Positions 12,342 to 14,457 of a stretch of DNA of 64,000 bases are shown in pieces. Every line of letters starts with the position of its first letter. Positions within the stretch are counted from its first letter, which is position 1. The DNA lies in assembly GCA_002269645.1 (NCBI GenBank), contig NIVC01000413.1, forward strand, positions 372,001 to 436,000, read 5' to 3'. The notes below the pieces were generated by a model. That model ran no database searches, was not told where the DNA came from, and saw only the letters and a program-made list of their open reading frames with translations. Origin of the DNA: Macrostomum lignano (Eukaryota). The position numbers and the translations under genes were made by a program.

Positions 12342-14457
12342 TCAGTCAAGTTCATCTTCTTCCAATGGTCGATGGTGATCACCAGAAGCTTCGAAGTTCG
12401 ACTCGTCGTCATCGCGAGAGTCTAGCGTACCGCTAGCAACGACATTACGCAGATGCTGCGTCAGAAGCGTCGCACCGTACTCGGACAGGTTTGTTTTCTG
12501 AAATAAGGATATGCGGGTTGTTTTTATCAAACCACCGAAAACCTATTAACAATATATGTTTATAGGTTTCTTACAAACCTATATAAAAATTTGCTCTAAC
12601 AATCAAAATTCTCTGAAAGAATTGCTCGGCTCTCAGGGAATAGAAGAGTAATAATTACTAGCTTTTATCGCCCTAATCAACCATAAAACTTTCAGTCATG
12701 CTCACGCGGTCCTTGAATATCAGAGGCAGCACGGGTGAGCTGCGGAGCAGCTCGCTAAATACCAGAACGCTGCCCGGCACATCTCCGTCAGTCAGGGCGG
12801 CAACAAGAGAGGCTATTATAGCAAACTGCTCATTAAGAGCGGAGCCGACAATCTTGCCGTTCTGAACTTCGACTCGCATGGGCTCCAGATCAGCCAGCAT
12901 CCACAGCACGGCTGCCTTGGCCTCGTCAAAGCTCAACTCGGGTCCAAGCGGAGGGCACGCAATGCCTCTACTGATGGAATAGGCGAACGGCTCGACTGCC
13001 TCGTCCAGCGACTTGCCGACCCTGAAATGAGCCAGCGCTCTCAGCCACTCTCTGCACACCTTGGCGCAGTCGGGAACGAGAGAAATCAGAGACAGCAGAG
13101 CGTCAAGATGCTCGTCAGGTGATTTGCCGGAGAAATGCTTGGTCACTGCCGCATGGGCTTCGAGCACAGTGTGGAAGGCGCGCATGACCTGCTCCTCATC
13201 GTGACTGGATTCGTGCATCTCCACCAGAAGGAGAAGACCGAAGATGGTGTGGAACTGCACCGAAGTCACTGCGACCTCTGAGAGCGAGTCCATGAACACT
13301 GTCAACTCATTGAGCAGGCTCTGAATGACATCTTGGACTTCTTGAATAATCTCTGATTTCGGCTGGTGGTCCTTCTTGAAGTACACGGCTGCATCGCGAA
13401 GAAAGAAGTGCTTCATGCACACATCATCTGAGTCTGAGCTCTGCATCATTTCGACAAACATCTGCAACGACTTGCGAACGAGAGTCAGCAAGTTCTCCGG
13501 CTTCCAGTCGTCTTCGGGCGTTTCGTCGAGCATGTAGAACAGCAGGTTCTTGGCCATGTAGGTCTTCGGACCGGTGACTCGCTCGCTGATGACCTTCTTG
13601 ATGAGAAACTTAATGATGATGAAGAACTGGCCTTGAATCGTGTTGAGGTTTCTGAGCAGAGCTCTCTCCAGCAGAGTCGTGCTCACTCGCATGCGAGTTC
13701 CTTGACTGACGTTCGGAGGCGACGCCACGACTACGTGACACCTCGGAGTCTCGCTGTTGACCTCGTCGCTGAGCATCTGCAGGATGTGCGGCTGGATTCG
13801 TGAGGCACCACCGCGGCGATTCTTGTAGCCCGGCAGCAGCAGCTCGATTGGCGGATATCCGCAGCACGGCAGGGCGATGATGATGTCGAAAGCGCTGAAG
13901 ACGCTCACGTTTGGGTCACCCAGAATAATATTTGGTGCCGAGGCTGTTGATTTGGTAGTATGTTATTACAAGAATTTAACCAAGAGAATTCGTTTTATTC
14001 AGGCAATTACTTAGGTCGGAAAAATTGGAATCTAGATGTTTTTAATTGAAAACTTCACATTTTCGTGCAGTGGTAAAAACTGACACCGGACCTACTGACC
14101 TCTGCTTGATATGTCAGCGTGGCCATCAGAGTATAGTGTGAGCAGGTGGTCGTGGTGACACTGCCCATGCTCATTCTTCAAATCCCCAGTGAGGTGGAAC
14201 GATTTTCTCTGAACTGACAGTGAAACAATTGTGACGTCAATGTCGCTGCTCTCTTCCACGCTTCCATCCAGCTGAGTCAGCGAGCTGCCCCATCCGTCAG
14301 AGTAGCTGCCGAACAGATGCAGATTGTCAGTCTTGACCAGAAACCTCAGAGTGTCCTCAATCACTGACGCCATGGCCGACTGAATTTTTGCATTCGCAGA
14401 GTGGAATCCCGCGAACCGCATCTTCTCAGACAGTCTTGCGCTAAATGAACCTTCCAT
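12342..14457 (-). CDS. Mab-21 / cGAS-like receptor (cGLR) nucleotidyltransferase, about 583 aa. Exons 14457-14100, 13943-12706, 12497-12342
   Basis: GSYSDG...SDIDV signature, third Asp in FDIIIALPC, Mab-21 blocks RVSTTLLERALL, FFIIIKFLIK, YMAKNLLFY, WKPENL and HFFL. Junctions are phase-compatible (1,0) with consensus donors GTCAGT and GTGAGC; start context ACCATGG. Confidence 0.85.

What the first reader, a model, noticed from the sequence alone, without database searches (positions are those of the whole stretch)
12342..14457. cGAS-like receptor (cGLR / Mab-21) with an apparently intact catalytic triad
Seen: GSYSDG, SDID and FDII are all present in an uninterrupted three-exon model; no cGAS zinc-thumb H/C insertion is evident. 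Knowledge: GS...[DE]h[DE]...D is the active-site signature of cGAS/cGLR/CD-NTase enzymes that make cyclic dinucleotides, while Mab-21 proper is highly conserved and unlike this divergent sequence. Inference: a lineage-specific nucleotide second-messenger immune sensor with unknown ligand and product. No STING-like gene is seen in this window, so the effector is an open question.
Basis: partly seen in the sequence, partly recalled or inferred. Interest (0 to 1): 0.72.

Follow-up and report, generated by a model that had tools for sequence, protein, structure and literature searches.

The report
Flatworm cGAS-like receptor gene, intact
This is an intact three-exon gene for a cGAS-like nucleotidyltransferase with its catalytic residues preserved. 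It belongs to a large gene family so far found only in the flatworm Macrostomum and already catalogued as predicted cGAS-like receptors, so it is a new member of a known kind whose ligand, product and effector remain unknown.

Summary
A minus-strand gene (14457..12342) splices with GT-AG introns into an uninterrupted 583-codon frame carrying G50-S51, D72-I73-D74 and D139.

The motif alone is weak evidence, because a loose version occurs in 39% of shuffled sequences. The stronger evidence is:
- All detectable relatives are Macrostomum lignano 'Mab-21 domain' proteins. The best is 50% identical and has the same two intron positions.
- In 51 family domain copies, S51, D72, D74, R205, S207, E212, K231, Y248 and K251 are invariant. 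D139 is kept in 48 of 51.
- A family profile aligns to a cGAS/cGLR profile at 98.7% probability (E 2.4e-16). D139 falls on the third catalytic Asp of cGAS, and the zinc thumb falls opposite a gap.
- An AlphaFold model (pLDDT 80, pTM 0.84) matches only MAB21L1, cGAS, MB21D2, MiD51 and Sp-cGLR1 in the PDB.

The family is not new. Li et al. 2023 cloned five M. lignano members, one of them 47% identical to this protein, for their 140-enzyme cGLR screen. None is marked active with dsDNA or poly I:C.

Features particular to this clade are a 20-residue GS-to-DxD loop and a variable C-terminal helical domain of about 200 residues with no recognisable relatives. Catalysis, ligand, product and effector are inferred or unknown.

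Verdict: new member of a known kind, of moderate-to-low interest.

The parts
14100..14457 (-). Coding exon 1 (aa 1-119 plus 1 nt). It holds the N-terminal helices, strand beta1, G50-S51, the 20-residue loop and D72-I73-D74.
   Evidence: ATG at 14457 with an in-frame TAA 9 nt upstream. Donor is AGCAGAG|GTCAGT. The AF2 model has helices at 2-15 and 20-41 and strands at 46-49 and 73-78.
14305..14310 (-). Codons for G50-S51, the GS of the NTase activation loop.
   Evidence: S51 is kept in 51/51 and G50 in 49/51 family domain copies. It aligns to the GS of mouse cGAS (G198-S199 by my numbering) in the N-terminal hhalign run, which has low probability on its own.
14236..14244 (-). Codons for D72-I73-D74, the first two metal-binding acidic residues.
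   Evidence: D72 and D74 are kept in 51/51 copies. They lie at the start of strand 73-78. They pair with the E-F-D of cGAS, one residue out of register because of gap placement.
13944..14099 (-). Intron 1 (156 nt, GT..AG). It contains an in-frame stop.
   Evidence: The position is conserved in the M. lignano P0001 gene.
12706..13943 (-). Coding exon 2 (aa 120-532). It holds the third catalytic Asp, the nucleotide-pocket residues, the Mab-21_C helix bundle and the C-terminal family-specific domain.
13885..13887 (-). Codon for D139, the third catalytic Asp.
   Evidence: It aligns to the Asp of 'SVDII' in mouse cGAS (D307 by my numbering; human D319) in hhalign at 98.7% probability. It is kept in 48/51 copies and lies at the start of strand 138-146.
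13336..13572 (-). Mab-21_C (HhH/H2TH-like helix bundle), aa 244-322, including Y248 and K251.
   Evidence: Pfam PF20266 scores E 8.6e-4 and 19.8 bits in this protein, below the 24.1-bit cut-off. It is hit in 13/13 family members, best E 8.6e-13. A PDB profile search puts Sp-cGLR1 8gjy first at E 4.2e-4.
12706..13314 (-). Family-specific, mostly helical C-terminal domain, aa 330-532. It lies beyond the cGAS fold.
   Evidence: The full-length AF2 model shows helices at 329-553 with pLDDT 60-93. Modelled alone it reaches only pLDDT 62.8 and has no PDB match below E 1. It is less conserved than the catalytic part, 0.41 against 0.52-0.71.
12498..12705 (-). Intron 2 (208 nt, GT..AG).
   Evidence: Donor is GACCGC|GTGAGC and acceptor is TTATTTCAG|AAAAC. 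The position is conserved in P0001.
12342..12497 (-). Coding exon 3 (aa 533-583 plus TGA). It encodes a disordered acidic tail ending ...PLEEDELD.
   Evidence: The tail resembles the P0001 ending ...SLIEDDID and the P0002 ending ...LNDELLD. pLDDT is below 50 and net charge is -9.

Best explanation
The locus encodes a cytosolic cGAS-like receptor (a Mab-21-fold nucleotidyltransferase). It belongs to a large paralogous clade so far seen only in the flatworm genus Macrostomum.

Shown here:
- The reading frame is intact.
- The fold is that of cGAS and MAB21L1.
- The metal-binding triad (D72, D74, D139), the GS loop and the counterparts of the cGAS nucleotide-pocket residues (R205, S207, E212, K231, Y248, K251) are all present and conserved across the clade.

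Inferred from what is known of cGAS and cGLRs:
- In the resting state the GS-containing activation loop keeps the site incompetent.
- Binding of a ligand remodels the loop. The ligand is a double-stranded nucleic acid in every cGLR whose ligand has been identified, and it binds on the face opposite the active site.
- Two Mg2+/Mn2+ ions held by D72, D74 and D139 then catalyse condensation of two NTPs into a cyclic dinucleotide, which diffuses to a receptor that starts a defence response.

For this clade the ligand, the product and the receptor are unknown. The clade differs from characterised cGLRs in three ways:
- The GS-to-DxD loop is 20 residues long, at the upper limit of the family pattern, and carries a conserved DGWG.
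- There is no zinc thumb.
- There is an extra, fast-evolving C-terminal helical domain of about 200 residues plus an acidic tail. I take this to be the likeliest ligand-sensing or partner-binding module.
For: - Gene model: three exons, GT-AG introns, 583 aa, no internal stop. Intron positions are shared with M. lignano P0001.
- Relatives: 17 and then 20 hits, all M. lignano. The best, P0001, is 50% identical over 95% of the query. Ten further clusters that I looked up were all M. lignano.
- Family size: about 30 further clusters at 50% identity match the cGLR part of the profile.
- Pfam: Mab-21_C is hit in 13/13 members, best E 8.6e-13.
- Profile-profile: hhalign against cGAS plus invertebrate cGLRs gives 98.7% probability and E 2.4e-16. 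It pairs D139 with the catalytic Asp of 'SVDII', and pairs R205, S207, E212, K231, Y248 and K251 with conserved cGAS residues.
- PDB profile search: Sp-cGLR1 first at E 4.2e-4, then cGAS, then MAB21L1.
- Structure: AF2 pLDDT 79.9 and pTM 0.84. Secondary structure follows the NTase order of beta1, GS, short helix, beta2 with DxD, and a later strand starting at D139. The top 50 Foldseek PDB matches are all MAB21L1, cGAS, MB21D2, MiD51 or Sp-cGLR1, with E 1e-5 to 2e-3 and target TM about 0.5.
- Conservation in 51 domain copies: S51, D72, D74, R205, S207, E212, K231, K235, Y248 and K251 are kept in 51/51, G50 in 49/51 and D139 in 48/51.
- Literature: Li et al. 2023 (PMC9980059) accepted five M. 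lignano members as predicted cGLRs with complete active sites and cloned them. PAA57558.1 shares the whole stretch printed in Table S3 with my hit P0002, which is 47% identical to this protein.
Against: - No activity data exist for this protein.
- The five M. lignano relatives in the Li et al. screen (poly I:C plus ISD45 dsDNA) carry no 'active' note.
- The NTase half is too divergent for PF03281, the Pfam model of the Mab-21 family's N-terminal NTase domain. Its stand-alone alignment to cGAS is not significant (E 0.0084, probability 4.8%).
- The literal pattern h[QT]GS is not met, because position 49 is Phe.
- I could not read model coordinates, so the three carboxylates were not shown to converge in space.
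- The catalytic core is mildly acidic (pI 6.1) and the whole protein has net charge -28. This is unlike the basic DNA-binding cGAS, although the active Pd-cGLR construct, as truncated in the table, is also acidic.
- STING and cGAS were not found in a planarian (PMC13563047). Li et al.'s per-species table shows zeros for four cestodes. A canonical receptor may therefore be missing.
- Transcription was not tested.
Confidence: 0.7

Rival explanations
1. It is a non-enzymatic Mab-21-fold protein, a scaffold or adaptor like MAB21L1/2 or MiD49/51. It would keep the fold, and perhaps nucleotide binding as a cofactor, but make no messenger.
For: MAB21L1 (5eom) is the top Foldseek match and MiD51 also appears. 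The M. lignano relatives are not flagged active in the Li et al. screen. PF03281 gives no hit. The closest homologue, P0001, has SS in place of GS.
Against: Across 51 paralogous copies that are only 25-50% identical overall, D72, D74, S51 and six pocket residues are invariant and D139 is kept in 48. That pattern is expected for catalysis, not for a scaffold. Li et al. state that Mab21L1/2/3 lack a predicted functional active site. Many cGLRs in that screen are thought to be inactive in vitro only because their ligand is unknown.
Confidence: 0.12
2. It is an active nucleotidyltransferase with different chemistry. Candidates are linear 2'-5' or 3'-5' oligonucleotides as made by OAS, non-templated tailing as by TENT/PAP enzymes, or nucleotidylation of a protein or small molecule.
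For: The signature FGS-x-DGWG...SDIDV resembles the palm motif of PAP/TENT enzymes (my own knowledge). Family member P0172 gives sub-threshold hits to NTP_transf_2 (E 0.065) and the MTPAP palm (E 0.092). UniProt names one member 'NTP_transf_2 domain-containing'. The 20-residue loop is at the limit of the cGLR pattern.
Against: No OAS or PAP/TENT structure appears among the 50 Foldseek matches listed for the full-length model, and 43 of those have E at or below 0.001. The C-terminal lobe is Mab-21_C, not a PAP-associated or OAS1_C domain. The residues paired with the cGAS pocket are conserved.
Confidence: 0.13
3. It is a recently dead or silent copy, an unexpressed paralogue lying among transposons.
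For: The gene sits between broken piggyBac-type and Tc1/mariner-type transposase remnants. No expression data are available.
Against: There are 583 codons without a stop across three exons, with canonical splice sites at conserved positions. Every family-invariant residue is retained.
Confidence: 0.05

Closest known systems
Macrostomum lignano predicted cGLRs: BOX15_Mlig010774g2 (P0001), and PAA57558.1, PAA86972.1, PAA45980.1, PAA93208.1 and PAA68676.1 from the Li et al. 2023 screen panel
   Same: Same clade. Identity is 50% to P0001 and 47% to P0002, which matches PAA57558.1 over the stretch printed in Table S3. They share the three-exon structure, the GS-x20-DID-x62-FDI layout, the DGWG loop, the Mab-21_C lobe, the C-terminal helical domain and the acidic C-terminal end.
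   Different: This is a different gene, and probably a different species. Its exact protein is absent from the 5.8-billion-protein collection, and a neighbouring pyruvate-kinase-like exon finds nothing there. It keeps GS where P0001 has SS. It lacks the N-terminal ankyrin repeats carried by many paralogues.
[quoted passage not shown]
   Same: Same Mab-21 fold. Sp-cGLR1 is the best PDB sequence-profile hit at E 4.2e-4. Both have a complete GS / DxD / D site and no zinc thumb.
   Different: Sequence identity is only about 18% over the aligned part. The activation loop is 8 or more residues longer than in mouse cGAS, where 11 residues separate the GS from the first acidic residue. There is an added C-terminal domain of about 250 residues. 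Ligand and product are unknown.
Vertebrate cGAS
   Same: Same fold and same catalytic architecture. D139 pairs with mouse D307 (human D319). R205, S207, E212, K231, Y248 and K251 pair with mouse R364, S366, E371, K402, Y421 and K424. These residue numbers are my mapping of the construct used.
   Different: There is no zinc thumb and no basic N-terminal tail. The core is acidic rather than basic, pI 6.1 against about 9. Identity is 11-15%.
MAB21L1/2, MB21D2 and MiD51 (other Mab-21-fold proteins)
   Same: Same fold. 5eom is the top Foldseek match, and 7lt1 and 4nxu also match.
   Different: Li et al. describe Mab21L1/2/3 as lacking a predicted functional active site and as highly conserved. This protein has a complete site and belongs to a fast-diverging, lineage-specific expansion. 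It has no N-terminal membrane anchor as in MiD51; that MiD51 has one is my own knowledge, and the absence here rests on my reading of the N-terminal sequence and its helical prediction. No transmembrane predictor was run.

Membership tests
cGLR (criteria of Li et al. 2023, PMC9980059) | Catalytic core of the motif: GS, then 8-20 residues, then [DE]h[DE]h, then 50-90 residues, then h[DE]h. | tested here: met
   The protein reads G50-S51, 20 residues, D72-I73-D74-V75, 62 residues, F138-D139-I140. These residues are conserved in 46-51 of 51 family copies. The 20-residue spacer is at the upper bound of the pattern.
cGLR (criteria of Li et al. 2023, PMC9980059) | Gln or Thr immediately before GS (the h[QT]GS part of the pattern). 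| tested here: not met
   The sequence is L48-F49-G50-S51, and the literal regular expression fails. Across the family this position is V, F, L, M or T. The same authors accepted M. lignano proteins with M, L, F or T here, and other panel members have S, V or G. It therefore does not seem to be applied as a strict criterion. I treat it as a deviation, not an exclusion.
cGLR (criteria of Li et al. 2023, PMC9980059) | Sequence homology across both the NTase core and the C-terminal helix bundle. | tested here: met
   hhalign of the family profile against a cGAS/cGLR profile gives 98.7% probability and E 2.4e-16 over aa 119-316. That stretch runs from the third catalytic strand through the helix bundle. 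Mab-21_C is hit in 13/13 members. The first ~120 residues alone are not significantly alignable (E 0.0084), although GS and DxD pair correctly.
cGLR (criteria of Li et al. 2023, PMC9980059) | Predicted structural homology to known cGLR or CD-NTase enzymes (AlphaFold2). | tested here: met
   The model has pLDDT 79.9 and pTM 0.84. All top 50 Foldseek PDB matches are Mab-21-fold proteins, with E down to 1.1e-5 and target TM about 0.5, but rmsd is 7-9 A.
cGLR (functional definition) | [quoted passage not shown] | not testable with these tools
   This needs biochemistry. The five M. lignano relatives in the published screen are not annotated as active.
cGAS proper (vertebrate dsDNA sensor) | Zinc thumb H(X5)CC(X6)C inserted before the helix bundle. 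| tested here: not met
   No such motif exists (Cys and His positions). The cGAS thumb segment is opposite a gap in hhalign.
Mab-21 proper (MAB21L1/2) | A match to Pfam PF03281 (the model of the Mab-21 family's N-terminal NTase domain), high conservation, and no functional active site. | tested here: not met
   PF03281 gives no hit for this protein or for any of 13 family members. The active-site residues are present and conserved.
OAS / PAP-TENT nucleotidyltransferases | An OAS1_C or PAP-associated C-terminal domain, with closest structures among OAS or TENT enzymes. | tested here: not met
   No such Pfam hit was found. No OAS or TENT chain appears among the 50 Foldseek matches listed for the full-length model. 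Only sub-threshold palm-motif hits were seen in one paralogue.

The most novel reading that the evidence does not exclude
The Macrostomum cGLR clade is a separate signalling branch. Its family-specific, fast-evolving C-terminal domain (or, in paralogues, N-terminal ankyrin repeats) would sense something other than dsDNA or dsRNA. Its product would act on a receptor other than STING. The second point rests on reports that cGAS and STING are absent from the other flatworms examined.
Probability: 0.2. Interest if true: 0.75.

Novelty: new member of a known kind. Interest (0 to 1): 0.35.

Why it matters
Li et al. report that most flatworms have lost cGLRs other than Mab-21. A planarian study found neither cGAS nor STING. 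Macrostomum is the exception, with dozens of divergent cGLR paralogues. This gene shows that the expansion, with its active site intact, extends to a genome whose proteins are not in the public collections searched here.

If the enzymes are active, the clade is a natural test of what cGLRs sense beyond double-stranded nucleic acids. It also tests what reads their product in a lineage that may lack STING. M. lignano is amenable to RNAi and transgenesis, so the question can be addressed experimentally. The single gene adds little beyond what is already catalogued.

Tried and rejected
1. My error: the first family profile (A1) kept the ankyrin-repeat columns. As a result the PDB profile search and the only exhaustive representative-library job were swamped by ankyrin proteins. 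From I could use only the roughly 30 clusters that matched the cGLR part. The question of whether relatives exist outside Macrostomum therefore rests on the less sensitive word-indexed searches.

2. I searched a neighbouring pyruvate-kinase-like exon to identify the source species and found nothing. This shows only that the organism's proteome is not in that collection.

3. The C-terminal domain modelled alone gave a poor model (pLDDT 62.8). It had no PDB match below E 1. The result is inconclusive; it does not show a new fold.

4. The N-terminal 135 residues aligned alone against the cGAS/cGLR profile gave the expected register but no significance.

5. I considered net charge as a clue to a nucleic-acid ligand and dropped it. 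Family cores range from pI 5.4 to 9.7, and an active reference cGLR construct is acidic.

6. I considered splicing of the upstream ankyrin exons (43.7-46.6 kb, same strand) onto this gene. I rejected it as unsupported for three reasons. There is an in-frame stop 9 nt before the ATG. The N-terminus matches the ankyrin-free homologue P0001. About 29 kb of sequence with transposons lies between them.

7. Synteny with the M. lignano P0001 locus: only dispersed repeats are shared, and their orientation is inconsistent with the gene's.

8. Literature searches found no functional work on Macrostomum cGLRs or STING.
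Full report
OBSERVATION. The region 12342-14457 holds a minus-strand gene. Two long reading frames (14457..14092 and 13908..12673) and a short one (12530..12342) are visible in the raw ORF list. I scanned GT donors and AG acceptors around the first junction. I fixed the second junction at the one strong donor/acceptor pair. Under those conditions exactly one in-frame, stop-free combination appeared: exon 1 14457..14100, exon 2 13943..12706 and exon 3 12497..12342, giving 583 aa. 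GSYSDG, SDID and FDII start at residues 50, 71 and 138.

The motif alone is weak. A loose GS...[DE]x[DE]...[DE] pattern occurs in 39% of shuffles of this protein, and a version with hydrophobic flanks in 2.9%.

RELATIVES. A search of about 5.8 billion proteins returned 17 hits, all from the flatworm Macrostomum lignano. UniProt names them 'Mab-21 domain-containing' or 'Mab-21-like HhH/H2TH-like domain-containing'. The best hit, P0001 (BOX15_Mlig010774g2), is 50% identical over 95% of the query. A profile search with an ankyrin-free family alignment again returned only M. lignano proteins, 20 in all.

My exhaustive representative-library search was spoiled by ankyrin columns that I left in the profile. 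Even so, about 30 further clusters at 50% identity matched the cGLR part. All ten that I looked up are M. lignano. Many paralogues carry N-terminal ankyrin repeats.

The P0001 gene has introns at the same two codon positions, aa 119 and about 531. This supports both the gene model and common descent. The window protein and P0001 are each other's nearest relatives, at 50.5% against 45-46% to the next.

The exact protein is not in the collection, and a neighbouring pyruvate-kinase-like exon finds nothing there. Dispersed repeats in the window match the M. lignano locus at 77-86% nucleotide identity. The source is therefore probably a Macrostomum species, or a close relative, whose proteome is not public. 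I could not settle this.

WHAT IT IS. On this protein alone Pfam gives only a sub-threshold Mab-21_C hit (19.8 bits against a cut-off of 24.1), and PDB sequence search gives sub-threshold cGAS hits. The family as a whole is clear:
- All 13 aligned members hit Mab-21_C, best E 8.6e-13.
- The family profile finds Sp-cGLR1 (8gjy) at E 4.2e-4, followed by cGAS chains and MAB21L1.
- hhalign against a profile of mouse and human cGAS plus eight invertebrate cGLRs (sequences from Li et al. Table S3) gives 98.7% probability and E 2.4e-16 over residues 119-316.

In that alignment D139 pairs with the Asp of cGAS 'SVDII'. By my numbering of the construct this is mouse D307 (human D319), the third catalytic residue. 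R205, S207 and E212 pair with 'WRLSFSxxE'. K231 pairs with the conserved Lys of 'KLMKYL'. Y248 and K251 pair with 'SYHVK'. The cGAS zinc thumb lies opposite a gap.

The N-terminal 135 residues alone align without significance (E 0.0084, probability 4.8%). The register is nonetheless the expected one, with GS on GS and DID on EFD.

STRUCTURE. An AlphaFold2 model built on the family alignment has mean pLDDT 79.9 and pTM 0.84. Its secondary structure follows the NTase order: strand 46-49, G50-S51, short helix 51-54, strand 73-78 beginning at the DxD, and strand 138-146 beginning at D139. All top 50 Foldseek PDB matches are MAB21L1, cGAS, MB21D2, MiD51 or Sp-cGLR1, with E 1.1e-5 to 2e-3 and target-normalised TM about 0.5. 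The rmsd values are high at 7-9 A, so this shows fold identity and not a close superposition. I could not read coordinates, so I did not measure whether the three carboxylates converge.

CONSTRAINT. S51, D72, D74, R205, S207, E212, K231, K235, Y248 and K251 are present in all 51. G50 is present in 49 and D139 in 48. These paralogues are only 25-50% identical overall. This is the strongest argument that the site is used. The window gene keeps every one of these residues, whereas its nearest relative P0001 has SS in place of GS.

WHAT IS PARTICULAR.
1. The spacer between GS and DxD is 20 residues, the upper bound of the published pattern. It contains a conserved DGWG and a second conserved Gly.
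2. The residue before GS is Phe, not the Gln or Thr of the published pattern.
3. After the Mab-21 fold ends near residue 325 there are about 200 more, mostly helical residues and a 50-residue acidic, disordered tail. This C-terminal domain is less conserved than the catalytic part: majority-residue frequency is 0.41 against 0.52-0.71, and identity to P0001 is 45% against 55%. Modelled alone it is poorly predicted and matches nothing in the PDB.
4. The protein is acidic, with core pI 6.1 and net charge -28. This is not diagnostic, because family cores range from pI 5.4 to 9.7.
5. Several Cys and His residues (H113, C147, H189, C295, H298) are invariant in the alignments, and C188 is invariant in A1. 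They may form a family-specific metal site. I did not test this.

WHAT IS KNOWN. Li et al. 2023 (PMC9980059) define cGLRs by three criteria: the motif h[QT]GS[X8-20][DE]h[DE]h[X50-90]h[DE]h, homology across both lobes, and AlphaFold similarity. They report more than 3,000 of them. They note ankyrin- and TPR-fused forms. They state that nematodes and most platyhelminths have none other than Mab-21.

Their Table S3 lists five M. lignano proteins among the 140 enzymes screened. PAA57558.1 shares the whole stretch printed in Table S3 with my hit P0002. The table's 'Note' column carries labels such as '01, Pd-cGLR' for active enzymes. It is empty for all five M. lignano entries, and the main text never mentions the species. 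The authors caution that many enzymes may be inactive in vitro for want of the right ligand.

A 2026 planarian study found neither cGAS nor STING in Schmidtea (PMC13563047). Li et al.'s per-species table shows zeros for the cestodes Hymenolepis microstoma, Mesocestoides corti, Echinococcus multilocularis and Schistocephalus solidus. M. lignano does not appear in the part of that table held here. I found no paper on the function of Macrostomum cGLRs.

MECHANISM. What is shown: an intact gene, a Mab-21/cGAS fold, and a complete, conserved catalytic and nucleotide-binding set. What is inferred from the family: a ligand-induced rearrangement of the GS loop, two-metal catalysis by D72, D74 and D139, joining of two NTPs into a cyclic dinucleotide, and signalling to a receptor. 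What is unknown: the ligand, the product, the receptor, and the role of the C-terminal domain. I guess that the domain is the sensing or partner-binding module because it is the variable part.

Rivals, with my probabilities:
- A non-catalytic Mab-21-like scaffold, about 0.12. Active-site invariance argues against it.
- An NTase with other chemistry, about 0.13. The palm signature has a PAP/TENT flavour and one paralogue gives sub-threshold NTP_transf_2 and MTPAP hits, but all fold matches and the C-terminal lobe are Mab-21-type.
- A silent copy, about 0.05.

VERDICT. The gene is a new member of an already catalogued, Macrostomum-restricted cGLR clade. It is not a new kind of system, and interest is moderate to low. 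The open and more interesting question is what this clade senses and what reads its product in a flatworm lineage that may lack STING. That question applies to the whole clade, not to this locus.

Noticed in passing
window 61097-61498 (-) and 50510-50953 (-): These are exons of a pyruvate-kinase-like gene spanning more than 10 kb (Pfam PK barrel E 4.9e-13, PK_C E 1.6e-6). The barrel exon found no relative at E<=1e-5 among 5.8 billion proteins, which is odd for so conserved an enzyme. It reads '[10 protein letters not shown]' where, from memory, typical pyruvate kinases read 'DTKGPEIRTG'. It may be a divergent paralogue or a decaying copy.
   Followed up: partly
window 43760-43950 and 45885-46550 (-): There are ankyrin-repeat exons on the same strand as the cGLR gene, about 29 kb upstream of it. 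Many M. lignano paralogues are ankyrin-cGLR fusions. I found no evidence that these exons are spliced to the cGLR here: an in-frame stop lies 9 nt before its ATG, and transposons lie in between.
   Followed up: partly
window 32036-36018 (+): An LTR-retrotransposon-type element has a gag/protease ORF and an uninterrupted 908-aa RT-RNaseH-integrase ORF. Its GC content is 0.61-0.65 against about 0.43 for the surroundings. The intact pol ORF and the foreign composition suggest a recent insertion.
   Followed up: partly
window 9282-10805 (-) and 19034-20155 (+): A piggyBac-type transposase (PF13843 plus zinc finger) and a Tc1/mariner-type HTH plus DDE_3 transposase flank the cGLR gene. Each is split into two ORFs, so both are probably broken copies.
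   Followed up: partly
window 4394-6415, 6819-7474, 26075-27296, 28019-31103, 36720-37429, 56670-57349, 58911-60094: There are many long tandem minisatellite arrays, up to about 3 kb. They read open in several frames and show strong strand composition skew, for example GC 0.30 and GC skew -0.6 at 4-6 kb. The long 'ORFs' there are artefacts of the repeats.
   Followed up: no
window 17058-18543; also 3057-3320, 23428-23514, 24228-24421, 60759-60980: Dispersed repeats match the M. lignano contig NIVC01001984.1 (locus L001) at 73-86% nucleotide identity. One family also lies inside intron 2 of the M. lignano P0001 gene. This is the main clue that the window comes from a Macrostomum-like genome.
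   Followed up: partly
cGLR protein residues H113, C147, C188-H189, C295, H298 (window exons 1-2): A set of Cys and His residues is invariant across the Macrostomum family, and most of them are not conserved in the cGAS/cGLR reference alignment (H298 pairs with His in mouse cGAS only). They could form a family-specific structural metal site.
   Followed up: no
cGLR protein C-terminus, window 12345-12368 (-): The extreme C-terminus, ...PLEEDELD, resembles that of several paralogues (SLIEDDID, LNDELLD, LQEKPLD). It may be a short linear motif at the end of an otherwise disordered acidic tail.
   Followed up: no
locus L001 1-5959 (M. lignano): The gene next to the closest M. lignano homologue encodes a C-type lectin domain protein (PF00059), another candidate recognition molecule. 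No counterpart was noticed in the window, but I did not search for one.
   Followed up: no
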